A stretch of DNA of 64,000 nucleotides from Paragordius varius (GCA_964247055.1 OZ176050.1:6572001-6636000), one strand, 5' to 3'; shown: positions 32,604 through 56,397, counted from the stretch's first letter. A program made the numbers and translations. Notes: a model not told the origin generated them from the letters alone.

Positions 32604-35600
32604 TTAATAAAAAGCTCGACCCAATATTAATGCATCTGGTGGATAATCTTGCAACATCGTCAACTCGTAAAAACCAAGAAGTTTACAATAGAGATCTTGT
32701 TCATTAATATTTCGCAATGGAACCGTGGTAAATACACCCGTTGACCCTATAAACAAAATTAAAATAGATTATTTAATTTGGATTTTAGATATTTTTGGTT
32801 AAATCATTGGAACAGTAATTGGCTTAGGTTCCGGATCGGTTCCACATATTTAAAAACAGCTTACGGTTTCGGACAAAATGATTCGGATCTAAGTTTTTGG
32901 CAAAAATATTTGCTCCCTGTTGGGTTCCACATTTAAAATAACTTAAGTATAGTAAAACTATAAACAAAATTGCTAACTCTGTTATTCAACTAAACATGGC
33001 TACAAATTAAATAAAAAGCAAAATCATATTGTAATAAAAAGATAAAATTAATTGTTTTAAACCGGGTAATATTTAAAATCGGCTACGTCGTTAATAAACT
33101 TTTTCTTAATTCAACGGTTCCAAAAAAAATAATAGTTTCGGATTTAAAAAGTGCAGTTCCAATTCCTGAAAATAATCAAGTTATGAGGGCAAAAAATTGA
33201 TATATATATATATATATATATACCGTATAATTTCAGGACTGACATGAGACATGCCAACATACGTTTTGGCATACTAAAATCCATGAGCGCTGGTGAAAAC
33301 GCACATTGTATGATAGAGGGGTAATGTTGCAACAGTTTGTAGGGTAAATAACGTTTATACTTCATAAACTTTGATTCTATTATGCTCTGTAAATGATATC
33401 ATGAAAAAGTAAAAAAGCATATAATACACACATCGTACGTTAAAAACAAAATATACAGTTTATAGCTCCGTTTCCTTTTTGTAAATAAAAACAAATCATG
33501 AGTATAGCCTGACTAGAGCCGACAATGATCATAAAAATTGAGTAGTTTCGCGATTTAAACTCTGGCATACACAAACACACGAAGTGCAAATTCGAAACCT
33601 TGATACATATCTAATCTACAAAAGCTTACTTAATACCAGCTTTAATTTTAATTGATGATGAATATTATTTAGTTTAATATCCCTCGAACAATTCAAATAC
33701 CCTAAAAATAAATATGTGTTTTCGGGATAAAATTACTCATCATTAACATGAAATATATTTTTACGACTTATTATTTTTCAGCATTATATTAATTTTAACC
33801 AGAATTGCATATTTTATATATATTAAATAAGAGTAATTTTTAATCTTAAAAAACACACAATTTATTTTAGGGTTAATTTGAATTGTTCAAGGGTGTGAGC
33901 TGTAAATGGTATATTACAACCATGAAGGCTTAAATACGTCTCTCAAGAATAATAAAGATATAAAATATTGCAGTTGTCATAATTTGGTTTGTAAAAAAAT
34001 TTTAAAAAATTTGCTTTGTAAATAATGTTTTGTAAAAATATAGAAATTATCTGAAACCAATATTAAAATAAAATAACCCTATTTTGTTATCAAATAAAAA
34101 AATATCAGTTGGGAAATATATTTTAAATGGATATAATATTGTTTATATAATGCGTATAAAACATAAAATTGAAATTAGTGAACTATTAATAATGTTAAAC
34201 CTTGAACTATTAATTAGCAAAATGAAAATTTTATTAACCTAAAATCGAATAAAATAAAAAAAATTGTTATTACACGGTTTAAATACAAAAATCTGAAAAA
34301 AACATTTTATATAAAAAATAACCTAAAAAACTCTTAACATAAATTTTAATTATATATTTTACGTTCTACAAGGTAAACCTGCAAAATTTCATTTGAAAAT
34401 TTTAGGGATTTCAAACACAAAAAATTAATAATCAGTTATCCATATTTTCAACGTTGAACAAAAAACATAAAATATATTAAGGTTAATCTTGAAATATATG
34501 AGACTTTATTAGTTACTTATAGAAAACGCTTTAACATTTATATTTATAAAAGATAAGCGATTAAAGTTCCACAATAAGCGAATTTTTTATGCAGAACCAA
34601 AATCAATTTTAATTTAACTAACTAACTGGGTTATATATGTGGTATATATTATAATATATATATATATGTATAAGAAGATGCAGACCTATAATTTACTTGA
34701 GTCATAACAGTTTATAGTAAAAAGAATTAAATCATACCTGTGCAATTTTATCATTTTCATCATAATCATTATTTGGGTTAATCGTTTTCTCGTCGAAATC
34801 TCTTTCAAAACGATCCGCAAGGTTCGATTCCTGCTTTGTAATCTAATATCACGAAATAACAAATTTGTCATATTGTACATTCTAAGATATCATTTTTCAA
34901 CACTTTTATGATACATCAATAAAAAATAACACAATTGGAAATTAAAAGCATACTTTATATTTGTTAACCATTTCTGGTAGTACTGACATTTCATAAGCAG
35001 ATAAATATTTTTTACTATCAGGTGCACATAACATGTAACCAACTATAGATGACGATGTTTCTGTCGCGTTTTGGCTAAACAGTTTAAACACATATTAATT
35101 TATATCGATTATATATTAAAGTAGCTATATTTATTTAATATATTCATTTAACGAGTAAGCTACTTGGTATTAATTTTGTGTGTGGAACAAAACGGATTAA
35201 TCTCTTCAATGACAAAACATGTGGCAGGACAAAGAGCCAAAAATCCACCGACCAAACTATATATTTAAATATATATATTTCTTTTTTGAACAAAAAAATG
35301 CATCAAAATTTAAAATTTTGTAAACGGAGAAAACATACTAATCTCCTGGGAGTTCGGAATAATTTTTAAACCATTGATTTCCGTTTCTACCATCATCAAA
35401 TGTCATCCTAGCAATATTGTATATGGCCATCTATTGTCACAAGCAAAAGTAATTAAGGTTAAAAAAATACTGTCAAAATATAAATTACACGGAAAAGGCG
35501 TAAAAATGTAAAGACATATATATTTTATACAAAGAGTGCGGTACTTTTTTAAAAGTGTATTTTTTAAAGTAGATAATTATTCAATGCAAAGTATATAATA

Positions 35601-38600
35601 GAGATGTATATTAGTAATTAATTAAATAATTTATATAGGAAAAAATAAGGTTTAAAAAGGTATGATTGTAATTTCAATTTTTACTGTAAAAAAAACTTTC
35701 CATTTAATTTTCCTTTTAAAGAAAAAAGAAATTATAATAGACCTCATCCTCGTCAGAACTTGGGTTAAATAATCGGATGCGATACGTGTTTTTAACCGGA
35801 GGATACGGAGGTCTATGGCAAAACAAATCTATACATGTATCAAGTGGTAACATTCGGTGAAATTCTGCCTGTAAACCACCTCTGAGAAGAGTTGGTTCCG
35901 ACGATGATCTATAAAACATGGTGGTTAGATTGGGGATTACAAGAGATAATTAATAAAATTAAACTTTTCTTTACTATGTAATTACATTAAATGAAATAAG
36001 TCGGTAAATACATTAAAGTACAATATTAACATTATATTTGTTTAACCAAAAAAACTAAAGTTATAGAAAAAATATGTGTTAGAACCACATATTTTTAAGT
36101 CTTAGTGCCACCTCCCTGCGGTGTTGGCTGGGGCACAAAAATGCGCTAACGGCAAAGGCTAGTAAAGGGCATATGTTACGTAAAAAATCGCCTCAATTAA
36201 CCATGAAGTATAAATTTATTAATATATTTTGTGGAAAAAAAACTCCAAATCCGGAGTCCTGAAACAACCTGATTATTTTTATGTTGAAAATGTTAAAAGT
36301 AGTTTTATGTATATATAATAATAATATCAAAACTCTCAAAAAATACTTGATTTCTTTTTGCGCTTTGGTTTCTTCAGTATTGGAATCTTTTTTGGAATCC
36401 TTAATAGGTTTTTTAGTTTTATTTTTGTTTAATGCCGTGTGATTAGGCGTCTCCTTGTTTGAGGTAAACGATAAAAATGGTAAAGCTTTGGTTAGCATTG
36501 ATTGGGTCGTGAGATCTATGTATTAATATTAGACTATAAATTGTTTAAAATATAAATTAAGAAAATTATTATAACAAAAATATACTAGAATAACCATTCC
36601 AAACCTTAATAATTTCACCAGTTATTAAATAATATAATAAAAATTTAAATTCAAAAAAATGAAATAAAATTATGCTTAAAAGCATTCTTTTAAACATCTT
36701 ATAAAAATGACAGCAAATTCCAAATAATATTATACGCTTAAGAAATTAAATATGTAAAGGGTTAGCCTTAAACATCAGGGTAAAAATTATATTTGCGATA
36801 TATAACACTCAATATTGATAAGATTAGTACTTAACGTTTGGAAAATTTTTACATGCTGTCTTTATATGTTTAATTAATGCAAATATTAATACTAACACAT
36901 TTGAAATGAGTAAATCATGTATAAAAACTACCTTTTGAAGAAACAACATTTTCTATTGCGGCGTTAGAAACGACGTTGATAGATGATTTAGCGGGTGAAC
37001 TGGGAAACATGGGTGTAGGAGGAGGTTCAATATATCCGCCATTATGACTGTCAAATTCTTCGGAATCCATATGCATCACTTCGTTACTTTTTAAAAAATT
37101 TATTTTTTATTATCATGCAATCCAAAATTATTATTTTAATGGGTAATTTTATTATTATAAAAAATATTGTAAATTGTTTGAAATTTTTCTAAAAAATACC
37201 TTTCTCCATTTCCTTGACTAGATTTGTTGAAGTTCGCATTTTCTGTCAAAGAAACGTACAAAAAAATTAATATTAATAATGTAAAATGTTTAATGTTATA
37301 TGCGATTATAGCAATCAAAGAGGGAACAAAAATATTTCAATAAACATTTGTTATTCAAAATGCAATCATTTCTATCAAGTACCTTTTACAAGATTGGGCT
37401 TAGCGTCTCCATTTCCCTTTTCCCGCCCTTTTGTATCTTCTGCGATCGTCATTTCATGATCTCCGACAATAGTGTCGTCATATTCTCCATTAAAAATTTT
37501 TGTGTTATTATTTAAAGTTTGTTGTTCGTTTGCATTTTCAGTTCCCGCCGCAGTAGTGTTTGAGATGTTGTCCTCAACATTTTTTTCTTCAACAATGTTG
37601 TCTTTTACGTTTGTTTCTTTAATTATTTCGCTTCTTTTGATGTTAATCGTGTCTGTGTTATTCGATGATGTGGATGATGAATTAGAATCTGTACTAGTTA
37701 TTGTACTTTCGTCAGTAGTTATACTTTGTGTTTCAGGCAAAGTTTTAGCAATGATGATATTATCTTGTGTATTATTACTATTGCTTGTTGAGAAATTGTT
37801 TATGGTGGTGAGTGTACTTTTAGCCACAATGCTAAAACCTTTGCCATAGTATGCATTCCAACTGTACCGTTCCTCCAACAATTCACACAATTGATTCTTG
37901 AAAGCTGTTTTTTGTTTCTCGTTAACTTGCGTTTTATCCTTTTTCGTATGATTTTTATTACTTTCTTCATATGTAGTAGTACGTTGGCTTGTTGTTAAAC
38001 TTGAATCTTCATTTTTATTTGTAAGTTCATTGGTAATGTTATCCTGTAAGGTGTCAATAAAATATTATAAAAATATACCTTACAAATTAATAATATAATA
38101 TGTGTTTAAAAGTTTAACAATAAAAACTTTTATTTTGTGAATCAAAAAAACGTAAGATATTGATTGATTAATATGCTCAAATTTAAAAAAATATTTATAT
38201 AAAATTAATTTTTATACCAAAAAATAGTTTTAATGTAATTTGACTATAATTAACGCTTTTATCACTAAGTCTTACGGTTTGGTTAATCAGACTTACTTTC
38301 GAAACAGTGCTGTTGTTATCTTTAAGAGATTCGGTGGTGGTAATAGAAGGTGAAGGAACAATATAATAATCATCTTCATCGGAATAATCTGCAAAAAATT
38401 ATCGATAAAAATTAATTTACCAATTATTATTAATATCATTAATATAATAACTTTTAAAAAAAATTGGTAAATTAGCCATAATATAGTTTAAATGATAAAA
38501 AAATATTATATTTTATATAATATTAATTGGAATTATGTAAATTCAGCAATAATCGAATGTATTTATACAGTAATGAGATATTATTGACCATTTCAATTTT

Positions 38601-41600
38601 TTAAATGGCTAAAAGGGGGATTTAATTTACATGTCTGTTACATGTATGAGATTTATTTTTATCAGTTACATATCTAATTAAAATTGTGGAAAATTACAGT
38701 GGCGCTTGTTCGCAATAAGGTGGATAATTTATTTAAGTTTCACATTTCAAATTTTCATAGTCTTTAGCATTGATTAAATATGTTAAAATAAAATAATATG
38801 GAGATTCGCCATTAAGTAAAAATAAAATTAATTCATTGATCAAATTTTGCCAAAAAAGTATCGTCAGATTCAATAATTAATATAATATTATTCGTTAATA
38901 AAAAAGATAATTTAAATTTCAAAACCTTCTTAATGTACAAGAAACGGTTACAAATTTTCATTTTAATTTTACAAATTTTAGTTATAATAACTTTAGCTTA
39001 AATATTTTATTTTTATTGATAAAATTGCTAACATGATATTTTACTAACAAGCGCCACTATTTTTCCCCTTAAAATTTTTTATAAAAATTATAAGTATAAA
39101 AAATTCATCATACCAACAAAAATGTAAATTAATCCCTTTTTTGCAAAGTAAAATAGCGTGATGGCCAATAATAGCTCTGGTTGATGTAGTTTTTGTTCTC
39201 ATAATTTTTTTATAAAATATATTATTATTTTGATATATACCATTTGCACTTCAAGAGTGTCTTTGAACACTTCAAGTTGGTCCTGGAAAACTTCAAGTTG
39301 GTCCTTGAACGTTTCAAGTTGATCCAGGAAAACTTCAAGGTCCTTGAACGTTTCAAGTTGGTCCTTGAACATTTCAAGTTGATCCTTGAACACTTCAAGT
39401 TGGTCTTTTGACTTTCTTGTTTTGTTTTTAACTTTTATCAATCAAATCGAAAATAATTCATCTATTTTATTGTTTTTAACCTATTTTTTATTATTTAACA
39501 TAAATTTTAAATCGGGCCAACAAAGTTCTATTGCCACCTCCCCGTGGTGTTGGCCGGGGCATGAAAATCCGCCAACGGCAAAGGCCAGTTTTCTAATGAT
39601 CTGTAAAATCATTAGTTGTACACAAGGGCATGTGATACGTAAAAAATTGCCTCAATAAACCATGAAGTATAATAATATGAATATGAAATAACACTAAAAC
39701 CTTATCAACATCTCAAATAACAATAATAATGTAATAATTATTTTGATAATATTTTTTATTTACACTTTTATACACTTGAATAAAAAAAATTACCAAAATA
39801 ACTATGAAAATATATAATACCCTTAGTAATAATAATAAAACACTTCTGAAATTTGCCACATGGAATGTGGGTACCCTAGTTAACAAAATATTAATGGTAA
39901 CAAACACTCTTAGCCAAAACAATATAGATATACTAGCGTAAATCTCGTGCTGCTACGCAGCCCGAGGAACTTCGGACTTCTGGGGGGGGGGGGGGGGGGG
40001 GGGCTATTTGAAAGGAGGGACAATAAAATGATCCACATATGTGGATTATTTCGAAACATTATTTAATAGATATGATTTTATAGGAATATTAAAACGGTGC
40101 ATTCATACTAATATATTGTTTAATTGGGGGAAAAATAGATTTAAAAAATCATTTTTGTGGACTTTTTTGAAAAAAATGGCATTTTACGGGGGTAGCGGGT
40201 AAAAAGAGGGCCTAAATCAAAAAAGTTATTTGAAATTGGATGGTCCAACACGTTCTCCAAAAAATTGACTTAACCCATTTTTCACACGGGGTGGGCCCGA
40301 ACTGGGGGCCTATTTTAAAAAAAGGGCGAAGCTATTGTCGGGGCATTCATTAATGATTATATTTTTTCGATATTTGGATTTGAATGGGTTCACCGGTTTC
40401 CCGGAAACAGATCACAAAGTTACATGAGGAATCAGTTTTTGCGGGTAGCTCCTTACCCAGCAGCTATCATCAAAGAAACGCCTGACTAAAATTTTTGCAA
40501 CAGGGAATACGTGGAATCCATATTGAACTTTTACGGTCTCATAGCTAGGGCAAAAAATAGATTTAAAAAACTATTTTTGTGGACTTTGTTTTTTGAAAAA
40601 GGTGGCATTTTACGGGGGGAGCGGGTAAAAAGAGGGCCTAAGTTAAAAAAGCGATACGACTATGTTAGGCGCAATCGAAAATAACTAAATATAAATCATA
40701 TTTGAAATTGAATGGTCCAACACGTTCTCCGGAAAATTGTCTCAAAGACACGATTTTTGTGGACTGCTGTTTTCAAAAAAAACCCGTTTTTCACGCGGGG
40801 TGGGCCCAAACTGGCGGCCTAATTCAAAAAAAGAACGAAGCATTGTCGGGGCATTCATTAATGATTATAATTTTTCGAAGTTTGGATTTGATTGGGTCTA
40901 CCCGTTTTCCTGTACCAGATCACAAAGCCATTTTCCATTTTTATAAATATATAGATGTTGCATCCAAGAGGCCAGAATGAAAGGAGAGGGATTGAAAAAC
41001 TTAGACGATTATACATTATTCTATAAAGGAAATGACAAGGGACAAGGTGGTGTTGCGATTTTCATAAAAAACATCTATCGTGATAACATAATTGATGTAA
41101 TAAGACATAATTCAAGAATGATTCAAATAAAAATATTGATGAATGATAATGTAATAAATATAGTTTCAACTTACGCACCACAATCTGGTCTAAGCGAAAC
41201 ATCAAAAAACGAATATTGGGAAGGGCTCTATGATTTGATGAACAAAACTTCTTCTAGCGAACAAACTTTTGTTGGTGATGATTTTAATTGCCATATTAAT
41301 AATGATAGTAATGAATACCATGGCGTACCTGGTGGAAATGGCGTTGGAGCCCTCGATAAGATGGGCGAGAGTTTGCTAGACTTTTGCATTGCAAATCAAC
41401 TCATAGTCGCAAATACCCATTTTAAGAAAAAAACCAACCAGCATAAAACATATAATTCTGGTGACCGCTCATCTATGATAGACTTCATATTAATTCCAAA
41501 AAACATTAGGAAACATCTAACAAACATCAAAACTTATTATCAATAAACTTACCAACACAAGCTAATAACAACATTTCTAATCATTGAGATAATCCGTAAG

Positions 41601-44600
41601 ACCGCATTCCAACCTCAAAAAATAAATATAGCAAATTTAAAGGATTCAAAATTATTAACCGAATATACTCAAAAACAGATTTACATATACCGGAACAAAA
41701 CAATGTCGAAACTCTATGGAAAATTTTTAAAACCACAATTCTTACATCTGCCAAAAAACATTGCGGCTTTACTAAACCAATGATGCAACGGAAAAGCTGG
41801 TGGTGGAAAAATGAAATAAAACCATTGTTGCGTGAAAAATGCGAAGCATATAAAAAATGGAAAAGTTCCAAAAATAATGATGATAAAAAAGTTTATGATG
41901 ATAAAAAACGAGAGGTCCAAAAGGCCATTCGACACGCTATGAATGAAAAATCCGTTAAAATCGCTGAAAGTTTAGAAAAAGACTTTAAAAACCAAACGAT
42001 TTTTAAAAGATTCAAAACCTTAACAATAGTAATAAAGATGTTAAAACCATAAAATGTATTATAAAGATGATAATGATAATATAATAACGAATTCCTCGAA
42101 AGTCAAAGAAATTTGGAAAACGAACTTAGAAAAACAACTCAACCAAGTAAACCCGACCAAACAATTTAGCACGGTTTCACCAGTAGCTGGTCCCATACAA
42201 GAAATCACCATAGATGAAGTCACAACTGCAATCAATAAATTAAAAAGCAACAAAGCTCCAGGCCCAAGCAGCCTTTCAGTCAACACTGCAGAGTATCTGA
42301 CAAAACTCTTTAAACAAATAATAATTACAAACCAAACTCCCAGCGATTGGAAAAACAGCATATTAATCCTTATTTATAAAAATAAAGGCGATCGACTAAA
42401 AACATCGTCTTACAGACCTCTGAAACTTCTGGAACATACACTCTAACTATTTGAAATTATATTAGAAAACAGGCTGAGAAAACATATAAACATAGATTCG
42501 AATCAGTTTGCATTCCGTCAAAACAGTAGCACAATAGATCCCTTGTTTGTCCTAAGAAGGTTACAAGAAAAATATTTGCAAAAGAAACAAAAGCTATACC
42601 ATGTCTTTGTAGATCTGGATCGTGCGTTTGATCAAATACCACGCTCAACAATTCAATGGGCACTGCGTAAAAACGGAATAGAGGAACATACAATACAAAT
42701 CTTACTACTTCTTTACAAAAATACAACAACCAACATTAGAACCAACATCGGCAATACAACCAATTTCCCAACCAATGCTGGGCATCAGGGTTCTGTCCTA
42801 AGTCCACTCCTTTTTATAACTATAATGGATGCGGCAACGCAAGACATAAGAAGTGAATGCCCTTGGGAAATGTTATTCGCCGACGACCTCGTGATAACGA
42901 TACGATCATGGGATCAACTGGTAAATAACTATACCAAGTGGAAGAAATGCCTTGAACAATATGGAATGATTATAAACGCCACAAAAACAAAAATAATGAT
43001 AACGGGTGAAAGTGAAACACCCAGATACCCCTGTTCCATTTGCAGTAAAGAAGTACGTTCAAATTTCATTAAATGCATATCATGTCAAATGTGGGTACAC
43101 AAAAAGTGCTCTAAAATAAAATACAAATTAACAAATGTAATAAATTTTAAATTGTTTAGACCCAAGTAATAATAATTTTAATCGACCAAAGCTACTTTAC
43201 ATTGATGGACATAACATCGAATTGGTAGACTCTTTTGTTTACCTAGGAGATGTCATATCATCTCAGGGAAGCCCACAAAAGGCTATCAAAAGAAGAATAC
43301 AACAAGGTTGGATAAAATATAATCAGTTAAAATATGTTTTCCAAAACAAAAATGTTAACAATCGTAATAAATGGTATCTTTAAGGCAGGAATAAGACCTG
43401 CTCCTACCTATGGTTCTGAAACCTGGGCGTTAAACAAAACTAATCAAACAAAACTCCTAACTAGTGAGAACCGAATACTCAAAAGCTGCTTTCGAAATAC
43501 CAACTTTCATTAAAAAAACAGACAAAATCGATTATATCATTCAAACTAATAGATTGCGTCTCTACAGTCATACTCAGAGAAGAGACGCCACCCATCCTTT
43601 AAAAACTGTTGAAAACATTAATGTTGATGGCAATAGAGGAAAGGGACGACCTCTCTTTTCTTATAATGATAATATAAAAATGGACTTGAATCAACGTAGC
43701 CATTCCACAGAACAATGTAAAGATCGTAATTTATGGAGGAAATTACTTCGTGGATACAAAACTCGGAATATTGAGTCCTAATATTATCCATCCATCAAAT
43801 TTTAAATCGATATCAACTTTTAATCTTTGAGAAACCGTATATCTTTATTAATTTCTTAAAATTTTGGATAATAATAAGATTTTAACAAGAAATGAAAAAA
43901 TATATAAGTTTTTTGGGTTATTAATTACAATTTTTAGAAAAAACTTTTAAAAGTTAATAATTTGTTGAATTGAAAAAAAAATAGTTTAAAACAAAAAAGT
44001 GGCTTTTCAATAAAATATTTCTTTAAATGAATAAATATATATTAAAGAAAATTAGGTTAATAAATAATAAAATAAAAAAATAAATGCAAAAATTTTGGTT
44101 AAATTAAATCTTAAAAATTTTAAGGACCATCTTAAAGTGTTCAAAGACCAACTTGAAATGTTCAAGGACCAATTTGAAGTGTTTAAGGACCAACTTGAAG
44201 TGTTTAAGGACCAACTTGAAATGTTCAAGGACCAACTTGAAGTGTTCAAGGACACTCTTGAAGTGCAAATGGTATATGGTGGCACTTTTTCAATGGGTAA
44301 AATAAAAATAAAATGAAAATAGTAGATCAAAGTTGGGAACAATTTCTCAATAACTTACTAGTTTGTGGATAGTCTAAAACCCTCAATATGATCCAAAAAT
44401 AATAAGTTAAATTAATTAATTTAACATTATTTTTTCGAATATCTTTAGGATATCAATTTTAATATTTATGTAATAAAATTTAATATTAATAAATTTAAAC
44501 AAAAAATTTTATTACTTTTTTCAAAAGGGTAATAAAGTAGCGTATGGTATTGTCCATTAAATTAATTTTTTGTTTTTTACCATATGCTACTGTAATGCTA

Positions 44601-47600
44601 ATAATAAACAACTATGCGTTTTTTCCACAATCAATGCCATTATGGAGCGGATCCCGTGTGATAAATTTTTCAATAAATAAACCAGAATAAAACAAAAAAA
44701 TTAGGTTATATTTTCAAATTGATTTTAAAAATAGCAACAATATTATTACATAAATTATTCGTAGACTTTGTCAATAATAATAATATTTTTTAGATCCAAA
44801 CATACCTTTATCATCATACATGTTAATTAACATGGTAGATGTGTTACTGAAAAATGGAGAACCATTTATGACGGCCGAAGTCAAAGGCTCACTTGGAAAT
44901 CGTCCAATTTCTAACCACGATATAAAGCCGCGAGCCAGAGTTACTACCTATTATTTATAATAAAGCAAAGAAATTTTACAATTTTTAAAATATTTAGTTC
45001 AAGATGATATCTTTGTATGGAATTGGCAAATATATTGATAGAGAAAAGTTATAAAATATATTGATTTTAACCAGAGGTGACAAAATCAATGGTTATAATT
45101 TAAAAACAGATATCATTTTAACTTTACAAGTATTCGTCTTAATTTATCGATTCTTAATAAGATTTAAGTAACTTCCAATATAATTCTGTAATATAAAAAC
45201 AGTTATCTTAATAAGATTCTATTTAGTAAAATCCTAATAAAATTAATAAAGTGAATAAAACATTCAAAAGACCTTCAAAGCATTAAAATATCATAATAAT
45301 GGTTAGATGCATTATTATAATTCATATTATTGTTCTAATATATGTTAAAATTATTTTATAAAACATTTGCAAAAAAATAATAACCCCTTTCAAATCATAA
45401 ACGTAGGGAAAGTATTCAAAAAGTGCCGCTTTATTCTTCGCCATCATCATTTTGGTGCACATTGCAATGATTTGATCACAAAAAGCAAAAAACTTTTGAG
45501 CTTTTTCATCCCATTCCTTGTATTCAGCCGTATAATTTAATTTGGGATCAGGTTTGCTCTCATTGTCGATATACTGCTGTTTAGTGTTGTTTTTAGTTTG
45601 GGATGTATCGTGATTCGAACCTTAAACAAATATATATTTTATTCATGTTTTAAGCTGTACTGTTTGTTATCTTGTAATTTATTACTCCCTCTACTAGTAA
45701 AATGCAACAATATATATTAAAACATGATTTATTTTTAGTTGTTAAAAAGTTTAGTAGTGTTTCATACTAAAAACTAATATTCTACAGATAGATTATCAAG
45801 GCAGTTATAAATAGTCAATTATAAAAAATCCAACCAAACAATGTATTGGTACCATAGGTTGAAAAAATATCAGTGAGTAATTTTTGCGAACAATCCTATT
45901 AATATACGTAAAAATCGAACCAATCTTTCAAAATCTTTATCTTTTTAACTTACACTGGTAATAATAATTTATAAACAGGATAAAACCTGTATTATTTTCC
46001 GATGCCGCCGAAGCTTTTTTCGATCTAAAATAACTTGTCCATTTTTTTATGCGTGGACCACTGCTCAATGTTTTCGTGGCGTTATTATTACTTTTTTTAT
46101 TTGTTTTCTCCTTTACACTACCACTGTTTGTCTCATTATTATTCATGGATTTGGATTCATCATTATTCTCATAGTTTTCTGGTATGATATTTGCATCCTT
46201 GGTTGGATTTAACAAACATTTGTAAGCATTCGCTTTTAACCAATGGAAGGAATCAAGTAACTTCTGTCCTTGTGGGCCATGTTCGAATGGCAAATAGAAT
46301 AGGTCACTTAATAGTAGCGCATCTTTTAGCGTAAACCGGATAGCTGGTGCGTGTCTTAACGTTTTGCGTTGTTGCGAAATCACAGATCCATTATTGTTAA
46401 TATTTTGTAATTTTTTGAAATCCTTGCCAACTGTTTGATCGTGAACATTTTCGCTGCATGATATAAGCGTATATTCAGCCAAAATGTGTGGAAAATATTA
46501 GGCTAAAACTTCTTTTTTCAAATAAATTTAATATCTTTTTGTGGCAAAAATTTTTTTTTATATTTTTGTGCACTAATTTATTTCTAATAATAAATTAAAA
46601 ATGAAATTAAATATTTTTAACTATGACGTTAATTCCAGCATAATAACCATGAATAAAAAACTTTTGTATACAACGATTAATTGTATTTAAAATAAAATAA
46701 ATATGCTGACGCAAGGAGATTATAATAGTTTACCCAATAGTTGAAGAATGGATAACATTGGTTATATTTTCATTTAATGTTTTGTTATTTATGTTCTCAT
46801 TTATAACAACACTATTATTTTTTATGAAATCTGTTGCATTGTGGTTTGATTCATCGTCAGAGTAAGCGACCAAAGACTTCGGGCCCGCCTTAAAATCTAT
46901 CAAAAATCATAAGAAATTTTATAAATTTTCATAAAAAATATCCAAAAAAATAAACAGCTAATAATAAAATGTTTGATAAAACTGGTTTAGAAATACTAAT
47001 CATTAACAGAAGCAAATTTATATAGACAAATCTTAGCCCCCGGCTAAGCTATTAAAGCGAGACTAACCTTTTTCGGAAACTTCTTCCGTTATATCCATCC
47101 TGCCTTCATCATCAATAAATGGAACTGCCGATTCTGTAAAAATATAGTTATTAAAGTATAATGACTTAATTATGATAATTCTATATTAAAATTCAATAAT
47201 TAATAAAATATACTCAATCAGATAAAAACTTTGAAATATATATCATTTAAAATTTCAGATTAAAGTTATCATATAAAAATTGTTATGAAAACGTACAAAA
47301 GCCTGGAATATCATACATGTATGATATGGATTAAAGTTTTTTAATTGTGTTCCAATATCGCTATAATTTTAATTACTATTTAACTACACAGGCTGGCATT
47401 ACTGCGCCAAACTATTTTGAATATGCGGCAACCTCATAAAGAAAATATACTTTCCAACAAATAAAAATCAAAGCTGACATAACAATAAAAATGCGATTTC
47501 ATTTAAAAGATAATGAGTTTTTTACTAAAAATTAATAATACTCAATGACATGGTCATGATCTTTAAAACTAAATCAGACTTCACATTTTTTAACCTAAGG

Positions 47601-50526
47601 TCGATAATCTACTTCTAAACTCCTGCTTAGTTACTATATTATATGTATATAAATATCCGATATTTTGGTCAAAAAATTTACATAAAATACGGAGTAAAAC
47701 ACTTTCACAAAGAAGAAAGTAAATATGGAGTAGCTCTTTGCTTAGTCTTGCATGCATTTATAACTAAATGTATGCGGGCAATTTAAAAAATGTTAAAACA
47801 AATCAATGTAAGCATAAGCGCTACTATTTAATATCCAAATTCATTCAACGTAGACTCAGGTACTACGGTCACATGCAAAGATTAGATAAAGATAATTGGA
47901 TAAAAATAAATTTCAAGCCAAACAAAAACAGAGTTTGTCATCCAGCAATAACATGGGACCATATTAACATTACCCAAGACGAGACCTATAAACTTAAAAC
48001 ATAAAAGCCGGTGATTGGAAAAACAAAAAATTCTTTAATAACATAGAACAATAGAGAAAAAAATATCACGACGAAAGATCAAGAAATTCCTTGACAACAG
48101 TAGTTTATCTATCTATCTATCTAGCACATCAGTTAAATACATTAAATAATTGATTTATTGCATTATGTAAAATCAACCATAAATAAAAATATTATTAGAT
48201 CAAATATAATAAATATTATAATTATTATATATATATATTTATTTATTTATTTATATATTTATATATTAACTTAGCAACAATCTAATAACTTGATAAAAAA
48301 TTTCAGTGTGTTTAAATATTAATATGTGGAAATAATTAGGTAACATAATATTTCTTTATTGATTTAAGAAAATTTAAATTTATACCATTTTTGTGCTGCA
48401 CGCTATGTTGGCTATTAGGATGTGAATCGAGGTGCATGGGTTCAAACGTTTCGTAATGAATTTTAAATGTTGCAGAGTTATTTGTTTGTTTGATTTGACT
48501 ATGACATATAACAAAAATTTTTATTTAAGATTAACTCAATATAAGACGCATATATATATATATCTTATTTATTGCACAATATAATAACTATCTATTTGGA
48601 TATGATTAAAATAAATACTGATTAATTTTGGAACAAAATGCAATAGAAAAAAATAAACAAGGCCTGTATGACATTTATATCCAATATTTAATGATCAAAA
48701 TGGCCTTAAATTAGCATAACGCTCCCAGAAAAAGATTAAAAAGGATATTAAAAATAATGAGTCGATCTAAAAAATGTAATTATAAATATTTTGCTAACAG
48801 CAAAAATTGGCTTTTAAATATTAACAAACGTATAAAAAAATATATATTAATAATATACCATTAATTCATACCATTGTAAAGTCCCGAATTCGTCTAACCT
48901 TTTACTCTTATAACTCACCAGATCCCATTTTAAAATGGCATAAAATTATTATAATTAAGTACCTTTGATTAGTTCCATTGTCGGCACTAATTGTTAAAGT
49001 ATGTGTTTCGTTATCGTTATAGCCTGTATTTTTAGTTTCATCATTAATATTATTATTTGCATTAATTTGCGAATCTTTTTGATTAATTTGATCGACGGCA
49101 TCTGATATCGTTTGTGCCTTATAATAATCAAGAGTTCCTTTAATCTCCCGTTCAAATTCCATATCACATTCTAGCCCCTCGGTAGGGGTTTCATTAGCCA
49201 ATATTGTTACCAGCTTAGAAGATAAAATAATTATCAAAAAAATATATTTTATGGAGTTAAAATATATTTGTTTTTAAAAATAAGTACTTGTCGGTTATTA
49301 TTCTCCATCAAGAAAGTTGAATTATTCACGTTGGTTGAGCTTTTTGTGAGATTGTTTTCATCTTGAACATTGAATTGTAAATTGGTGGTGACATGAGAAT
49401 TGTTTGCACCAGAAAACATAGTTTGGTCAACCAATGAGGCTAATGGCGTTAAATTGGCTGGACTGAGGACATCTAAAATGTAATATTTGTTTCGAAAGTT
49501 AGAGAACAGGACAAATAATTTAAAGAATCCTATAATATACTGATATCGTGGAGCACGAGTATGTGTAATCTTATATAATTTTTGGATAAATTTAAAAAAA
49601 AATTTGGTAAGTATAAGGCTTTAAATTTAAAGATCAATAGAAGTAGTAAACAAAATATTTATGTTTTTATTTTATAAAAGTAGTTTGGTTCATAGCCAAA
49701 TTTTCAAATCAAAATCTATTACAAACCAATCCGTCGCCCCCTATTTACATAGCCCGAAAAGATTATAGTACTGGTACAATGTATATTTCCATAATCTCAA
49801 AAAAAGTTTATTTTGACTTACTAGATCTATCATTAGAATCTGGATATTCATTGTTAAGAGTAGGAAAATTTTGGTCAATAATTTGATTGGTTAAATGCAT
49901 ATTCACATCATCGAACAGCGTGTTTGGTTTTGAGGTCGTTGAATCAATGGCATAATCCATTTTTTCAATTTGTTCTGTTTAAAAGACGATTTATAATAAT
50001 TAGTTTTAATTGATAACTGAAAAATGAGTTTGAGTATAAGTATTTCTGGTTTGTTACAAATCTGGTTGATGTATAGCTTTAAAACGACCAAATATAAAAA
50101 GAACTTAAGAAAAATTTCAAACTACCTTTTTTGGTTGCTGTACCCTTAACAATTTCATCAATGTGTGGGAGAGGAGCGACAATTGTATTATCGCCATCAT
50201 TTTCAGTACAAGACACAGAACCTTGAAAAGATGGTTCAAAAATTTTGATTGGTGAAGTAGGTGTAATAAAAGTGTTTGAAACAGTGTTATCCTTATTAGT
50301 CATCACAAAATTGTGTTGATGTTCAAATTCACTCGAACTGGCTGGAAAATGAATTTCTGTATTCTGTTGACTATAGAATATAAAAAGCATTTTAGGAAAC
50401 ACACAAATCATATATAAAAATTATGGTAATAAATACTTTGTGGTATTATTATTATTATTTTCATTTTGCACCATTGTGTTGGATTGAACGTCATTATTAT
50501 GATCCATTAGGGTTAAAACTTTGTCT

Positions 50527-50561
<35 letters not shown>

Positions 50562-53500
50562 TACTAGATTATTAAATTTTTACAAAAACATGCCAAATTT
50601 TAATAAATAAAAAGATTATGGTTCTAAAAATTTAACGATATATATATATATATATATAGAAAAATTCGGTCCAAAAGGCTCGGAATGTTATTTCGGGTAA
50701 GTTTGATTTAATATAAAACATAAATGAATAATATTGGCATTTAGGTATTCTTTTACTTTTATGTTCTTGCAATGTATGGGAATTCCGTTTATTAATTTAA
50801 AAATTACTGTAATAAAGCAGGGTATGTCCAGTTTTATGCAAAACAAAAAATTAAAATCAAAATAAGAATCTTTCCAACATATATTTCTTCCCCTAGTGTT
50901 CAATTATTTGGCATAAACAGTTAATGTTTCAAAAAATGATTATTCAAAATCATTTTTGAACAAAATATTAATTACATATATACCAATGTTTGAATCAGTT
51001 TGCGAGGGCATATGAGAATTATTTACAATTACATTATTATAGGCATTTGTAATGTGTGTTGTAGTTGATTTAGTTTTAGATTTAATTTTTGGGATAATTA
51101 TGTTAACATTTTCATCCTTTAACTTTTCCACCAAACTATTGACTGGATGCATGTGAAGAGATGGGAGAATGTAATAAGATTTTTCACACAATCGATAACG
51201 TTCAATGAAACTCAAATTGAGGGCAGACGCAGCGCTGGTATAGAATGATGATGAGGCATTGGTACAACCCTAGAATCAAAATATATATAGTATGTTTTGG
51301 TAAAAACGGAACGTATTCACACTCTTACACGCACAAATGTTGTTAATATAATAATATATTTAGACAGTATTTTAAACGTTACAAAATGGCGTCAAAATAT
51401 ATTTTTTGACAAAAAGTGAGAAGTAAACTTAGAAAAATAGTCCGTAAAAAAGAGATGTGATTGTATATTCAAATCTGATATTGTAAAAAGAAAACAACTT
51501 TATTGTATTGACAAAGATTATCCATATTAGGCTAAAAAGTGTGCATAATTAAATCAGGTATCTTCTTTAAGCGATTGTATATAAGATTTTACAACCTGTT
51601 TGATTATTTTTGTGACTAATTATGCAAAAAGTTAAATTCTACTTAACAATCATTGATACAAAACCACTAGTTTTTAGTGATTTTGTCATAGCAACTAATC
51701 TGAAACAACTAATAATTATTTAAAATTACATCATGATAGGAAATATCAATAATCATCCTGAAAATTAAAATACACATGAGTTTTTTTCAAAAAAATAACG
51801 CTTTAAAACCAATTTTTTCAAGTTTCTTGCACTTTTTTGTAAATCAGGAGTTATAGATTTCATGTTATATTCGTTTGAAATTGCATGACCAAAAAAAATT
51901 AAAAATAAAATAGAAAAATCTTAAATAAATAAAAAATGAAATAATTTAAAATAATTGAGCCACATATATTTTTCCCTCCCATTGTTTTCTATAATGATAC
52001 CTAATTTTCCACAATAATATAACCAATAGTATAAATCAATTGAATGGTAATAAAATAAATATAGATACTTTAATGTATTTTTGAGAAAAATGGAAATTTC
52101 CCTCTTCGTCAGAACTTTCATCGTTAGAAACAAGGACATGACCATCATAACCTCCAGGTCCATAGTATATATTATCGGCTATTACGCATATATACATATG
52201 GATATAAATATTTTATTATAAAAGTTAGGTATTTTATATAAAATATAAATTTTTACAATTGTTTTCAAGTTGATTGATTCCTTCTTGATTCGGATGATTG
52301 GGTAGTTCACTATAACAAAAATTATTATGTAAATTAAATAGTTTAGATATATCTGAACAATCATAAAAATAGAATAATTGAGGGATTCGATTCGCATCTA
52401 TAAATTTAACAATATTTTGACCTCAAGAGATATGAATAATGTTGATTATATTGATAATGGCTTTTAGGCCCAATATTTATTTTATTGAATTATAAATACC
52501 TTTCATATTCATCTTCACTAAAACTGGTACTTAACATGTCACAATTATCATCATTTCCACTCGTGGTTTGAATACTCTATGTTTTAAATAAAAAAATTAC
52601 TTTAAATATAGCAAAACATTAATAAATAAAATATTCCATAATATAATCAGCCTAACAATAATATTAGCTGTAAAAAATCAATTATTAAAATTCCCAAATC
52701 TTTGTACATTATAGAGTGTTTTTTGGCTTACTGCGCATATATATTTAGCGATAAATTTATATTTTTATTTTATTACGTTAGAGATTTAGAGTTAAAGGCA
52801 TAAAAAAGAAAAGATGGCCTAAAAAATAATTATTTATGATTAATTAATTACACTCTATATTTGTATCTAAATATAAATATTAAAGTTAGAACTTGGGCTC
52901 CCTATAAAAATTATGATAACAGCGTTTTTGGGATTTTATTTAAAAGTGAAAATTTATTGACGTTTGAAATTAAATTCTTCAGATATATATAAGTCTATTA
53001 AAAGTTTGTGTTTCATGTGCCGTGGCATAAATTCGGTATTAATCTTTAAAAAAATATAATTAATATTAAAATTTATGCATATTAATATATTTTGAATAGG
53101 CTGCAACGGAGAATTCAAATCAGTAAGTAAACTTAAAAAAGTGCATTTAAAAGTTTCAGATAATTATAACGTGGTTGTATTCAGAATTATAGAAAAGGTA
53201 TAACCTATGAATTTAAAAAAAATATTGAAAATAGTCCGATATTTCTAAATACACACAAATCAGACCTTTTAAATTATCCTATATAAAAATTTCCTAGATA
53301 ATAACGATAGCTATTTGGGATATTTCAATTTCCCCTTATTTTAAGGAACATATGCATATTAAGTAAAAATACTAATATTAATTTCTGTAAGCTTTAGTTA
53401 TCCTATAATTATAAATAAAATTTTAAATAGGATCATCACTAAACTTTTTGAGAATAATACCTGAGACACGGATATGTGTTGAGGATCATGATAATAGGAA

Positions 53501-55707
53501 GATATGTTAGCTGCATTGTAAGATGAGTAAGATGATTTGTAATATGGAACGTTTGTTTGGGTACTTGTGCTATATTAGTTAAAAATAAGACTGTCAAATA
53601 TTTTGATTGATAAAAAATAACAACATAATAATTCAAATAGCTGATTGAATTTTTTTTCTTAAAAGGAACAATTTAAAAAAGTTATTTTACTTTGATTTTA
53701 TTTTAGTAACTTCGGCTGGTTTTACACTGGTTATCTTTGGACCATTTTTCGAAGGAGATTTTTCTTTAGATTCATTATTAGCTATTTTCGATTTTGCCGG
53801 TGAATCTGTTGCAAGTTTTTCAGATTCAGCTGGTTTAATTTTCTCCCCATTGCCGCTCTCTGTATTCACAATGGCATTGGTATCAGTGGATATTATATCA
53901 TTTACATAGGCCGTATTGGTGTTATTGGCATTGAAAATGTTGACTTTGTTTGAATACTGTGAAGCATTAACACACCTTGGGATTTGTACTAGATAAGGTG
54001 CTCTCGAGTTAACATACGGTAACCATGCTTTGAGAGCCATTATAAGCGCATTCCTGGCATCATAATCTGTGTGTAAAGTGAGTTGTTCATTTCTCACCAC
54101 ATTGATTGTATCGGGACTAATATGTGAAAAAATATGAAATGTACACTAAACATTTTCATATCATCCGAACTTTTTGGATGAATGATCTTTTTTGTTATAG
54201 ATTTCAGGATATGTTTGAAGATATATAAAAAAATATAACACAGCATATTTTTAGGATAAGACATCTTACTGAATTTCAGTATTTATCATACACTTGAAAT
54301 AATAAGATAACAAAAATATCAATCATTCAGTTGATGTGAAGAGTTTTACCGAAATATATTATATCACAATGTAAATGTAATTTACCTTTTCTTCGCTTGA
54401 CTCCATTGGGCCAATGTATGGAGTGCCACAAAATTGGCCTCAAATTCGCAGTTGGGATTCGATAAAACACCATCCAAAGGCCCTCCACGTCCCTCAAAAA
54501 ATGATTTGTTGGTTTTTTCTTGTTCATCCGTAGGCGATGTTACCACACAAGTATTAATAATGTCCGGTTCCCGACCAGTAAATGGTCCCAGAAATATACG
54601 TTTTGGATCATAATCATTGGCATGTATGTTATCCCAAAGTATGAGTGGATGTCCTTGGTTAAAAACACCCTTGAGCTCATCTAAACCGGAACGGGTAACG
54701 CGCTTTGAAACGACACGAGGCCCTGTCCACATAACAGCAATGGCCGGATCCAAAATTCGAGATAGCGTCCGCAAATATTCGGAACCTTTGACGTTTGGTA
54801 CAGCGCGACACACACAGTATTCTACGATGGAAAATTTTTATTAACACTGGTGGAAAATAAAATGTTAATAAAGTTTCAAGTAAATCATAAATGAAGGGAC
54901 CTATAATAAAATAAAGAAAGACTTATACGGTCAAGAAATTATCAAATTTTTATTATATTAAGCCTTTCACGGTATTAAAGACGGAGGGTTGCCGCTAATG
55001 AGAAGGGTTAGGGTTAGCAAAAATATAAATTTTTACATAAACTATAATATAGATGTGTTAATAAAACGATTTAGCTATAAATGGTCAATGAATGTCATTA
55101 ATATACCTGTTGGACAAAACATAAACTTTGGTTTTCCCATATGAGAATAAATTTCATTAGTAATCATTGCTTGAGCTTGAGCAAACGATTTAAATTTTGC
55201 CTTATCAGCATCACATAATTCGGCATCGATATCATCAAATAGAAGCGCAAACGCTGTGCACCCAAAACCCGCTACCTAAATTTTCAAAAAGTAAGTTAGG
55301 ATAAACATACTTGATCCATTTTTTTCTGAATTGCATCTATATCTCTCTGTTTAGAGAACGTTATATTTAATCCAGGAGACAGTGCATAATAAAAATCAAT
55401 ATCATTTTCTTTGGCCATTTTGATCAACTTAGCAAGGCATTCTGGAGATTAAAAACCAATACCTCCTTCAGTTTCAGAATATAATTCACGCCAATATGTC
55501 CGATGTTTGGTATCGTCCTTAGGAGCATACATATAAGTGTTAAGTTGCAAACTTTTCATTCTAAAAATTATTAAATATATACAACCGTTTAAATAATTCT
55601 TTACGCTGGCCCACAGTCCATGGTCTTCCATAAAAACCTTATATAAATAAAATGCAAAAACCCTCAACGATCCCACACAAAAATGTTTTTTGTTGTGACG
55701 AATCCAT
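32604..55707 (-). CDS. OGA: O-GlcNAcase (GH84 catalytic domain, stalk, C-terminal HAT-like domain) with large low-complexity insertions
   Basis: N-terminal exons give [63 protein letters not shown] and [10 protein letters not shown]. The stalk gives [14 protein letters not shown] (about 46250-46320), [16 protein letters not shown] and [15 protein letters not shown] (about 35830-35885). The HAT-like domain gives LVGGFL, HYPSII...[15 protein letters not shown] and LILGRAFY* (stop 32604-32606). Linker exon boundaries are approximate. Confidence 0.95.
36097..36215 (+). ncRNA. 5'-truncated HDV-like ribozyme / RTE 5'UTR remnant in an OGA intron (antisense to OGA)
   Basis: TGCC ACC TCCCTGC GGT GTTGGCT GG G GCA CAAAAA TGC GCTAAC GGCA at 36106-36154, followed by AAAAATCGCCTCAATTAACCATGAAGTATAA, homologous to 39630-39672. 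The P1 5' strand is absent. Confidence 0.75.
38698..39059. mobile_element. Small TIR element in an OGA intron
   Basis: CAGTGGCGCTTGTT / AACAAGCGCCACTA inverted repeat; TSD not clear. Confidence 0.5.
39515..39581 (+). ncRNA. Complete HDV-like self-cleaving ribozyme at the RTE 5' end
   Basis: P1 GGCCAAC (39515-21) / GTTGGCC (39549-55); P2 TTGCC (39531-35) / GGCAA (39577-81); P3 ACC/GGT; L3 TCCCCGT; P1.1 GG (39556-57); P4 GCAT-GAAA-ATCC (1 mismatch); J4/2 GCCAAC with the predicted catalytic C at 39572. Confidence 0.9.
39933..40955 (-). mobile_element. Non-autonomous Helitron (1023 bp) inserted in the RTE endonuclease codons
   Basis: Removing 39933-40955 rejoins GAT ATA|TGT TGC ATC CAA GAG (NIDI/CCIQE) in frame at an A|T site with no TSD. 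Termini are 5'-TC and CTAG-3' on the minus strand, with the hairpin GCTGC-GTA-GCAGC near the CTAG end. There is an internal duplication of about 400 bp. Confidence 0.92.
47775..48125 (+). mobile_element. LINE (RTE-like) 3' fragment in an OGA intron
   Basis: Reads [21 protein letters not shown]; (TCTA)n tail at about 48107-48123. Confidence 0.7.
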
Positions 55708-56397
55708 TTCTCATGGATCAGATGTTTGAATTTTAAAGTATTACGAATGATATAATAACATATGATATCTTATTCAAACTGGTTAGTATAGGGCTATTAT
55801 AGATAGATAAAGGGCTCTATATTTAATGCACCTGTTTTAATTTTATGTTATAAATTTCTGACCTTTACATGGGAATAACACTTAATGTAGATCCAGGTTT
55901 TATATTTTAAAGCGATTTTGAATTCCGTTCGGACTAAATATAAAAAATGAAATCTTTTGACATTTAAGCGCATTATCAAAATAAAATCAACTCTTATTTT
56001 CCGCATATTTCATGGTTAATAATATTTTTTTAAGGAATTAATTGCTTTTTGACAGTGAAATGAGCTCGATGCTAGCAAAGTAATTTTTAATTTAATACAA
56101 TACAGGTTCACAACAAAATATCTGGAAATATATATATTCTGATCGGAAAATGTATCAGGATGATTATAGTGCTTTTGGTTTCAGTTCATACATTAAGTTA
56201 TTTGCACTTTTCTGGCATTGATATCAAAAATGACAAAATTTACGCACTCTTTTTAAATAATATTTGTTTTATGAAATAAATGCTTCTTTCTAAATAATTG
56301 AAATATATCATAACCTACATATAAAAACCGGAAAGTTTATACAAAATTTTAATTTTTAGATGGGTGCTCCGAGATTCCCAAATTTTTTCCCTCTTAA

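What the first reader, a model, noticed from the sequence alone, without database searches (positions are those of the whole stretch)
55276..55661. Cluster of ultra-short spliceosomal introns (24, 25, 21 and 35 nt) in the OGA catalytic domain
Seen, on the minus strand: GTTTTTGCATTTTATTTATATAAG (55638-55661, 24 nt, in-frame TAA) splits the invariant CGIVEG|FYGRPW. GTTGTATATATTTAATAATTTTTAG (55561-55585, 25 nt, frameshifting) splits KELFK|[31 protein letters not shown] (55442-55462, 21 nt, in-frame TAA) gives YSETEGECLAKLI, gap-free against human YSVEEAEQLMTLI as I recall it. A 35-nt intron at 55276-55310 carries CTAAC only 11 nt from the donor. All are GT-AG and each removal restores orthologue register, so chance or assembly error is unlikely. 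Established: most animal introns are longer than about 40-50 nt; introns of about 20-30 nt are known mainly from ciliates, nucleomorphs and a few reduced parasites such as dicyemids. Inference: this animal-type genome has a spliceosome that handles 21-nt introns while also splicing multi-kb TE-filled introns in the same gene, implying both extreme intron-definition and exon-definition modes. Default aligners and gene finders would mis-annotate such genes.
Basis: partly seen in the sequence, partly recalled or inferred. Interest (0 to 1): 0.9.

Follow-up and report, generated by a model that had tools for sequence, protein, structure and literature searches.

The report
Tiny introns in hairworm OGA gene
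The first four introns of the O-GlcNAcase gene of this horsehair-worm genome are only 24, 25, 21 and 35 bases long. They sit where other animals have introns of 0.5 to 15 kilobases, which would make hairworms a further animal group with introns shorter than 30 bases, though no RNA was available to show the cutting here.

Summary
On the minus strand, four GT-AG segments (55638-55661, 55561-55585, 55442-55462, 55276-55310) interrupt an O-GlcNAcase (GH84) gene. Removing them gives a reading frame that aligns with human OGA residues 48-207 (E 5e-66).

They are almost certainly real spliceosomal introns:
- All four, plus the 285-nt fifth intron, lie at the same codon and phase as introns of the Limulus OGA gene (4-15 kb). 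Three of the four are shared with the leech Helobdella.
- Exons 2-5 are 52, 98, 131 and 169 nt, as in Limulus.
- The nearest relative found is the hairworm Gordionus montsenyensis. Its annotated introns at the same four sites are 41, 43, 46 and 51 nt.
- The spliced frame is under strong purifying selection (dN/dS 0.06).
- Independent DNA runs contain the segments, with a +1 and a +3 indel inside two of them.

No RNA covered this gene, so splicing itself is inferred.

The gene spans about 23 kb and has a roughly 7-kb intron carrying a LINE, so tiny and very long introns coexist. The held literature reports animal introns under 30 nt only for dicyemids and myxobolid myxozoans. This scan has already noted the same class on other DNA of this genome.

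The parts
55638..55661 (-). Micro-intron 1: 24 nt, GT..AG, phase 1, splits the Gly codon of VEG|FYGRPW
   Evidence: Same codon and phase as a 9972-nt Limulus intron and a 41-nt Gordionus intron. Absent in Helobdella. One SNP lies inside it, at 55651 in run X1.
55561..55585 (-). Micro-intron 2: 25 nt, GT..AG, phase 2, between LFK and RMK
   Evidence: Same site and phase as introns of Limulus (14869 nt), Gordionus (43 nt) and Helobdella (529 nt). Spanned by contigs of X1 and X5.
55442..55462 (-). Micro-intron 3: 21 nt, GT..AG, phase 1, between TEG and ECLAK. A 22-nt allele exists.
   Evidence: Same site and phase as introns of Limulus (4168 nt), Gordionus (46 nt) and Helobdella (750 nt). A +1 insertion behind 55452 is carried at about half the depth in X1 and is also present in X6.
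55276..55310 (-). Short intron 4: 35 nt, GT..AG, phase 0, between MDQ and VAGFGC, with CTAAC at intron positions 12-16. A 38-nt allele exists.
   Evidence: Same site and phase as introns of Limulus (5000 nt), Gordionus (51 nt) and Helobdella (506 nt). A +TTA insertion behind 55295 is seen in X6.
55662..55707 (-). Coding part of exon 1 (46 nt), starting at ATG 55707
   Evidence: An in-frame TGA lies at 55713-55711.
55586..55637 (-). Exon 2, 52 nt
   Evidence: Same length as Limulus and Gordionus exon 2.
55463..55560 (-). Exon 3, 98 nt
   Evidence: Same length as in Limulus, Gordionus and Helobdella.
55311..55441 (-). Exon 4, 131 nt
   Evidence: Same length as in Limulus, Gordionus and Helobdella.
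55107..55275 (-). Exon 5, 169 nt
   Evidence: Same length as in Limulus and Gordionus. Its donor follows CCAACAG.
54822..55106 (-). Intron 5: 285 nt, phase 1 (FCPT|EYC), of ordinary size
   Evidence: one search's table puts the exon 5 end at 55108 and this intron at 286 nt; the donor sequence it prints moves the boundary one base, giving 55107 and 285. Orthologous to introns of 5697 nt (Limulus), 7561 nt (Gordionus) and 440 nt (Helobdella). Non-3n indel variants lie inside it, at 54857 and 55090-55091.
54386..54821 (-). Exon 6, 436 nt, second half of the GH84 catalytic domain
   Evidence: The only indel variant seen in it is 3 nt long, at 54529.
32607..55707 (-). Whole OGA gene, about 23 kb, as mapped with the Gordionus protein
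   Evidence: tblastn of P0307 against the window. The last exon ends with ...ILGRAFY at 32607.
40977..43781 (+). Antisense non-LTR retrotransposon ORFs inside the OGA intron that lies between about 44834 and 37914
   Evidence: Pfam Exo_endo_phos_2 (40977-41546) and RVT_1 (42543-43169). No OGA-like exon was found between 44834 and 37914.

Best explanation
These are genuine U2-type (GT-AG) spliceosomal introns of the O-GlcNAcase gene of a gordiid horsehair worm. They are ancient bilaterian introns that have shrunk to 24, 25, 21 and 35 nt. The spliceosome removes them from the pre-mRNA to give a normal, conserved OGA catalytic domain.

A relative in another hairworm genus has 41-51 nt at the same four sites. 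The extreme shortening is therefore either a further step taken in this lineage or an ancestral state that re-expanded in Gordionus; the polarity is not resolved.

The likely branch site is a YTNAY motif whose A lies 14-15 nt from the 5' end in all four introns. That leaves only 7-20 nt to the 3' AG and no room for a polypyrimidine tract. Recognition would then be by intron definition, with the branch point measured from the 5' splice site (inferred).

The same gene also has ordinary introns and one of about 7 kb that carries a LINE.
For: Shown directly:
- GT..AG ends. Removal gives a frame that aligns with human OGA 48-207 with no gap at any junction, E 5.4e-66.
- Intron position and phase are identical to Limulus at all five sites, with exon lengths 52/98/131/169 in both.
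- Helobdella shares sites 2-5.
- The nearest protein in 1.84 billion representatives is Gordionus sp. m RMFG-2023, XP_065319632. Its locus has annotated introns of 41, 43, 46 and 51 nt at the same four sites, followed by one of 7561 nt.
- Over 157 gap-free codons spanning all four junctions, dN/dS is 0.058, with dS saturated at about 2.2.
- Variants in the conserved core are all synonymous.
- DNA contigs of three runs contain the segments, and none lacks them.
- Variants inside the segments include a +1 indel (21 to 22 nt), a +3 indel (35 to 38 nt) and a SNP. The only exonic indel is 3 nt long.
- A YTNAY motif with its A at 14-15 nt from the 5' end occurs in all four.

From the literature: in myxobolids and Dicyema the conserved A's lie further from the AG the longer the intron is (PMC13644364). 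I read that as a fixed distance from the 5' end, which matches the pattern here.
Against: There is no RNA evidence at this locus. The RNA-like run X12 of the same species label laid no contig, and no cDNA-derived near-identical protein was found.

The branch-site reading rests on four AT-rich sequences and was made after seeing them.

Splicing efficiency is unknown. In Microsporidia very short introns are spliced poorly (stated in PMC13644364).

I did not check whether RNA supports the Gordionus models.
Confidence: 0.9

Rival explanations
1. Assembly or sequencing artefacts: short spurious insertions in an otherwise intact exon.
For: None found. The idea arises only because 21-25 nt is unusually short for an animal intron.
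Against: Contigs of other runs contain them. X1 record 7 spans introns 1-2 at depth 341. X5 record 15 spans introns 1-3 with no difference. X6 covers introns 3-4. Each segment starts with GT, ends with AG, and sits at a conserved intron site.
Confidence: 0.01
2. A decaying pseudogene: the segments are insertions that disrupt a dead OGA copy.
For: Unspliced, the frame is broken four times. No transcript was seen.
Against: dN/dS against Gordionus is 0.058, with synonymous sites saturated. Core-domain polymorphisms are all synonymous. The whole 23-kb gene is colinear with the Gordionus protein to its last residue. Gordionus has introns at the same four sites.
Confidence: 0.02
3. The segments are removed at the DNA level in somatic cells, as with ciliate internal eliminated sequences or nematode programmed DNA elimination, rather than from RNA.
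For: Intron 1 is flanked by a 7-nt direct repeat, GGTTTTT. No RNA data exist for this gene.
Against: No DNA contig skips them; there were no joints in three DNA runs, although contigs show presence better than absence. The ends are GT-AG, and the positions are those of spliceosomal introns in Limulus, Helobdella and Gordionus.
Confidence: 0.02
4. They are real introns but are spliced inefficiently. Retention would truncate the protein, and the stops they carry may then trigger NMD, so the cluster would act as a throttle on OGA dosage rather than being neutral.
For: Each retained segment gives a stop or a frameshift. Poor splicing of very short introns is reported for Microsporidia (cited in PMC13644364).
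Against: No expression data exist. Stops in two AT-rich 3n introns are expected by chance nearly half the time each (my estimate). The same class is reported by this scan in many unrelated housekeeping genes, which argues against a role specific to OGA.
Confidence: 0.05

Closest known systems
Ultra-short introns of Dicyema japonicum and of myxobolid myxozoans such as Henneguya, Thelohanellus and Myxobolus (Hadjez et al. 2026, PMC13644364)
   Same: These are GT-AG introns of about 20-27 nt in animals, at conserved intron positions between conserved exons. There is no room for a polypyrimidine tract. A candidate branch A keeps a constant distance from the 5' end. The hosts are parasitic lineages.
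   Different: In those lineages the tiny size is the genome-wide norm (median 22-27 nt), and the paper describes myxozoan genomes as compact. Here only the first four introns of a 23-kb gene are tiny. The others run from about 80 nt to about 7 kb, and one holds a LINE. The lineage is an ecdysozoan phylum, Nematomorpha, for which I found no report on intron length.
Orthologous introns of the Gordionus montsenyensis OGA gene (LOC135927530, locus L002)
   Same: The four positions, the phases and the exon lengths are the same. The introns are AT-rich (80-88% AT). The pattern is also the same: four short introns at the 5' end followed by kb-sized ones.
   Different: The Gordionus introns are 41, 43, 46 and 51 nt, within the usual 'minimal intron' range of animals. 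Here they are 24, 25, 21 and 35 nt. Intron 5 is 7561 nt there and 285 nt here.
Tiny introns of ciliates (Paramecium about 20-30 nt, Stentor 15-16 nt) and of nucleomorphs
   Same: These are canonical GT-AG introns near the physical lower limit of splicing, and they are AT-rich.
   Different: They belong to protists, and tiny introns are the only size class there. Ciliates also use reassigned stop codons. The comparison rests on PMC13644364 and on my own knowledge, and was not tested here.
Polarised intron sizes of schistosomes and cestodes (small 5' introns, large 3' introns)
   Same: Small introns cluster at the 5' end of genes that also have long introns rich in transposable elements.
   Different: As I recall, the flatworm small class peaks at about 30-36 nt, not 21-25.

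Membership tests
U2-type GT-AG spliceosomal intron | GT at the 5' end and AG at the 3' end | tested here: met
   All four segments.
U2-type GT-AG spliceosomal intron | Removal restores one open frame colinear with orthologues | tested here: met
   No gap at any junction against human OGA 48-207, E 5.4e-66. 81.5% identity to Gordionus over 157 gap-free codons.
U2-type GT-AG spliceosomal intron | Same position and phase as introns of orthologous genes | tested here: met
   Limulus 4 of 4, Gordionus 4 of 4, Helobdella 3 of 4. Exon lengths are identical.
U2-type GT-AG spliceosomal intron | Absent from the mature mRNA | not testable with these tools
   The RNA-like run X12 laid no contig. X1, X5 and X6 behave as DNA and show no joints.
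U2-type GT-AG spliceosomal intron | Branch-point motif and polypyrimidine tract | tested here: inconclusive
   YTNAY with its A at 14-15 nt from the 5' end in all four. No pyrimidine tract is possible in 7-10 nt. The sample is four AT-rich sequences.
U2-type GT-AG spliceosomal intron | Evolves as non-coding sequence | tested here: met
   A +1 indel, a +3 indel and a SNP lie inside the segments. The exons show only synonymous SNPs in the core and one 3-nt indel. No sequence similarity with the Gordionus introns is evident by eye; this was not aligned.
Animal ultra-short intron class (under 30 nt; Dicyema, Myxobolidae) | Length under 30 nt | tested here: met
   24, 25 and 21 nt. The fourth, at 35 nt, is outside the class.
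Animal ultra-short intron class (under 30 nt; Dicyema, Myxobolidae) | Tiny size is the genome-wide norm (median under 30 nt) | tested here: not met
   In this one gene the other introns range from about 80 nt to about 7 kb. A genome-wide histogram cannot be made from one window.
Animal ultra-short intron class (under 30 nt; Dicyema, Myxobolidae) | Compact genome poor in transposable elements | tested here: not met
   A LINE lies inside an OGA intron, and there are further transposon-like ORFs in the window. The related Gordionus genome is 63.8% repeats.
Animal ultra-short intron class (under 30 nt; Dicyema, Myxobolidae) | Reduced splice-site motifs (GTa ... AG only) | tested here: inconclusive
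   The 5' ends are GTTTTT, GTTGTA, GTATTG and GTATGT. The 3' ends are TATAAG, TTTTAG, CTCCAG and ATTTAG. Four sites cannot give a logo.
O-GlcNAcase (GH84 plus stalk plus HAT-like domain) | GH84 catalytic domain and colinearity with animal OGA to the C-terminus | tested here: met
   PDB human OGA hits. PF07555 on all relatives. tblastn of the Gordionus protein covers the gene up to ...ILGRAFY.

The most novel reading that the evidence does not exclude
Horsehair worms (Nematomorpha) are a further, independent animal lineage with spliceosomal introns under 30 nt, down to 21 nt. [quoted passage not shown] Unlike dicyemids and myxobolids, this occurs in a large, repeat-rich genome, where the tiny introns are confined to the 5' ends of genes that also carry multi-kb introns containing transposable elements. 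Intron miniaturisation would then be uncoupled from genome compaction. Two hairworm genera (41-51 nt against 21-35 nt at the same sites) would give a natural series for finding the lower limit of U2-type splicing. A corollary to test is that such introns defeat standard gene finders and inflate the gene loss reported for this phylum.
Probability: 0.7. Interest if true: 0.72.

Novelty: new member of a known kind. Interest (0 to 1): 0.62.

Why it matters
A 2026 survey of 51 animal genomes (PMC13644364) concluded that introns under 30 nt occur in only two animal lineages, for which it noted obligate parasitism and small body size, and it described myxozoan genomes as compact.

This gene shows the same extreme in an ecdysozoan worm whose genome is repeat-rich. 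A 21-nt intron and an intron of about 7 kb carrying a LINE lie in one transcript. That weakens the idea that genome streamlining drives intron miniaturisation. It also raises a concrete mechanistic question: how does one spliceosome handle a distance of 14 nt from the 5' splice site to the branch point and 7 nt from the branch point to the 3' splice site?

There is also a practical side. As I recall, common aligners and gene finders use minimum intron sizes of about 20-40 nt. Genes like this one would then be mis-modelled, which is worth testing against the low BUSCO scores (71.6% for Gordionus) and the 'rampant gene loss' claimed for Nematomorpha.

The Gordionus comparison gives orthologous pairs for studying how far an intron can shrink.

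Tried and rejected
- **RNA proof.** Both run searches found only runs that behave as DNA on this gene. The RNA-like runs of the same species label held none of the sampled words. The single read-laying run (X1, X5, X6, X12 at 85% likeness) gave no joints and no X12 contig.
- **cDNA-derived proteins.** Searches with the spliced 167-aa N-terminus and with exon 6 gave nothing above 60% identity. A search with Gordionus residues 1-260 found no other hairworm protein and no annotated protein of this species.
- **Look-ups that failed.** Exaiptasia P0009 and Gordionus isoform P0158 were not on record in the look-up of encoding contigs. The longest isoform, P0307, worked.
- **Literature.** Searches for intron length in Nematomorpha found nothing relevant. 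The Gordionus genome preprint and a comparative hairworm preprint never use the word 'intron'. Cunha et al. 2023 is not held. The supplements of PMC13644364 are not held, so I could not see whether a hairworm was among its 51 genomes.
- **Rfam.** A scan of the window gave no hit.
- **NMD signature.** Rejected as uninformative with two cases.
- **U12-type introns.** Not pursued further, because the 5' ends (GTTTTT, GTTGTA, GTATTG, GTATGT) do not match the U12 consensus as I recall it.
- I first placed the exon 5 end one base off and corrected it to 55107.

Full report
**What is there.** On the minus strand an ATG at 55707 opens an O-GlcNAcase gene. An in-frame TGA lies two codons upstream.

| Segment | Length | Effect if read through |
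|---|---|---|
| 55638-55661 | 24 nt | in-frame TAA |
| 55561-55585 | 25 nt | frameshift |
| 55442-55462 | 21 nt | in-frame TAA |
| 55276-55310 | 35 nt | frameshift |

With the four removed, the 167-residue product aligns with human OGA residues 48-207 at E 5.4e-66. There is no gap at any junction; the only gap is one residue near the end.

**Are they introns?** I tested this by intron-position homology.
- *Limulus polyphemus.* The OGA locus (L001) was rebuilt exon by exon so that its translation equals the annotated protein exactly. Its first five introns lie at the same codons and phases (1, 2, 1, 0, 1) as the four segments plus the next, 285-nt intron of the window. Exons 2-5 are 52, 98, 131 and 169 nt in both species. 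The Limulus introns are 9972, 14869, 4168, 5000 and 5697 nt.
- *Helobdella robusta.* The leech (L003) shares sites 2, 3, 4 and 5, with exons of 98 and 131 nt, and lacks site 1.

These are therefore old bilaterian intron positions.

**Whose genome, and what a relative shows.** A profile-free HMMER search of 1.84 billion representatives with exon 6 gave one outlier. This is a 1,887-aa protein of Gordionus sp. m RMFG-2023 (G. montsenyensis), with 78% identity over the matched stretches. Earlier notes of this scan had suggested a hairworm, and this is my own test of that lead.

The Gordionus locus (L002) was rebuilt exactly from the 1,888-aa isoform, giving 21 exons. It has introns of 41, 43, 46 and 51 nt at the same four sites and phases, followed by introns of 7561 and 4218 nt.

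The two species are not close:
- Exon nucleotide identity is 73-79%.
- Synonymous sites are saturated (dS about 2.2).
- dN/dS over 157 gap-free codons spanning all four junctions is 0.058.

The spliced frame is thus under strong selection, which makes sense only if the segments are removed. By eye the intron sequences show no similarity between the two species beyond AT-richness; I did not align them.

**Raw-data check.** One read-laying run on 53600-56100 gave the following.
- Runs X1, X5 and X6 cover exons, introns and upstream DNA alike, so they behave as DNA. None gives a joint.
- Their contigs span the tiny introns. X1 record 7 covers 55453-55781. X5 record 15 covers 55429-55703 without a difference.
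- Variants inside the segments are a one-base insertion behind 55452, a TTA insertion behind 55295 and a SNP at 55651. The one-base insertion makes a 22-nt allele of the 21-nt intron; it is at about half the depth in X1 and also occurs in X6. The TTA insertion makes a 38-nt allele.
- The only indel inside an exon is 3 nt long (54529).
- Exonic SNPs in the conserved core are all synonymous. Non-synonymous ones fall in a lineage-specific insert and in the disordered linker.

This excludes assembly error and argues against a pseudogene. The RNA-like run X12 of the same species label laid nothing, so there is no RNA evidence either way at this locus.

**The rest of the gene.** tblastn with the Gordionus protein maps the gene from 55707 to 32607, ending ...ILGRAFY.
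- Downstream introns that I could delimit are 285 and 269 nt, and roughly 430, 310, 82 and 125 nt.
- Between 44834 and 37914 there is no OGA-like exon. There is an antisense non-LTR retrotransposon with endonuclease and reverse-transcriptase domains.

The tiny ones are the first four, the same four that are shortest in Gordionus.

**How it probably works.** Each of the four has a YTNAY motif whose A lies 14 or 15 nt from the 5' end, whatever the intron length. That leaves 7, 10, 10 and 20 nt to the 3' end. The two indel alleles keep such a motif.

Hadjez et al. (PMC13644364) report that in myxobolids and Dicyema the conserved A's lie further from the AG the longer the intron is. I read that as the same geometry. 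I therefore infer canonical U2-type splicing by intron definition, with a minimal spacing of about 14 nt from the 5' splice site to the branch point and no polypyrimidine tract. This is an inference from four AT-rich sequences, made after seeing them.

**Compared with what is known.** The held literature says that animal introns under 30 nt are known only from dicyemids and myxobolid myxozoans, and it predicts that more lineages will turn up. I found no statement on intron length in Nematomorpha.

The present case shares the size, the canonical ends and the conserved positions. It fails two features of that class: tiny size as the genome-wide norm, and a compact genome. I file it as a new member (a new lineage) of a known kind, with an unusual bimodal, 5'-biased setting.

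This scan has already reported the same class on other DNA of this genome.

**Verdict.** These are real micro-introns with about 0.9 confidence. Splicing itself is unshown. Interest is moderate to high because 21 nt is below the shortest median intron length reported for any animal genome, and because the genomic setting contradicts the compaction explanation.

Noticed in passing
window 5183-5329 (minus strand): An ARH3-like (ADP-ribosylglycohydrolase) gene has two candidate micro-introns near its 5' end: 5307-5329 (23 nt, frameshifting) and 5183-5203 (21 nt, 3n, with a stop). A 33-nt alternative for the second fits ARH3 less well. A spliced model hits solved ARH3 structures at E 2e-13.
   Followed up: partly
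window 45325-45621 and 44834-44947, against L002 exons 14-16: Intron positions differ between the two hairworms. The window has an intron of about 430 nt after ...YDLKG that Gordionus lacks. Gordionus has a 3755-nt intron after ...TKMIK where the window reads straight through. A further intron of about 125 nt in the window (about 35090-35210) interrupts what is a single exon 19 in Gordionus.
   Followed up: partly
window 55631-55668 (minus strand): The 24-nt intron is flanked by a 7-nt direct repeat (GGTTTTT at the exon 1/intron boundary and again at the intron/exon 2 boundary). Microhomology deletion there would remove the intron precisely. Gordionus has no such repeat.
   Followed up: no
window 39500-43800 (plus strand): A non-LTR retrotransposon (Exo_endo_phos_2 and RVT_1 with a PHD-like zinc finger) lies antisense inside an OGA intron.
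   Followed up: partly
window 54386-54821 and L002 11272-11940: Hairworm OGA carries a low-complexity insert inside the GH84 domain, between GPF.GR and [14 protein letters not shown]. It is about 25 residues here and about 110 in Gordionus. The Gordionus protein is 1,888 aa, against roughly 900-1,150 aa in most animal OGAs returned by the searches. The polymorphic non-synonymous sites and the 3-nt indel fall in this insert.
   Followed up: no
runs X5 and X6 (organisms B and C), laid on window 53600-56100: Runs filed under two other organism labels hold this locus at 95-100% identity and low depth (2-16). They could be infected hosts, mislabelled samples or very close relatives.
   Followed up: no
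window 55712-55714 (minus strand): An out-of-frame ATG lies 7 nt upstream of the OGA start codon. It opens a 17-codon ORF that overlaps the start and runs into micro-intron 1.
   Followed up: no
window 58405-59146 (plus strand): Two adjacent ORFs (109 and 108 aa) with a transposase-like look gave no Pfam hit.
   Followed up: partly
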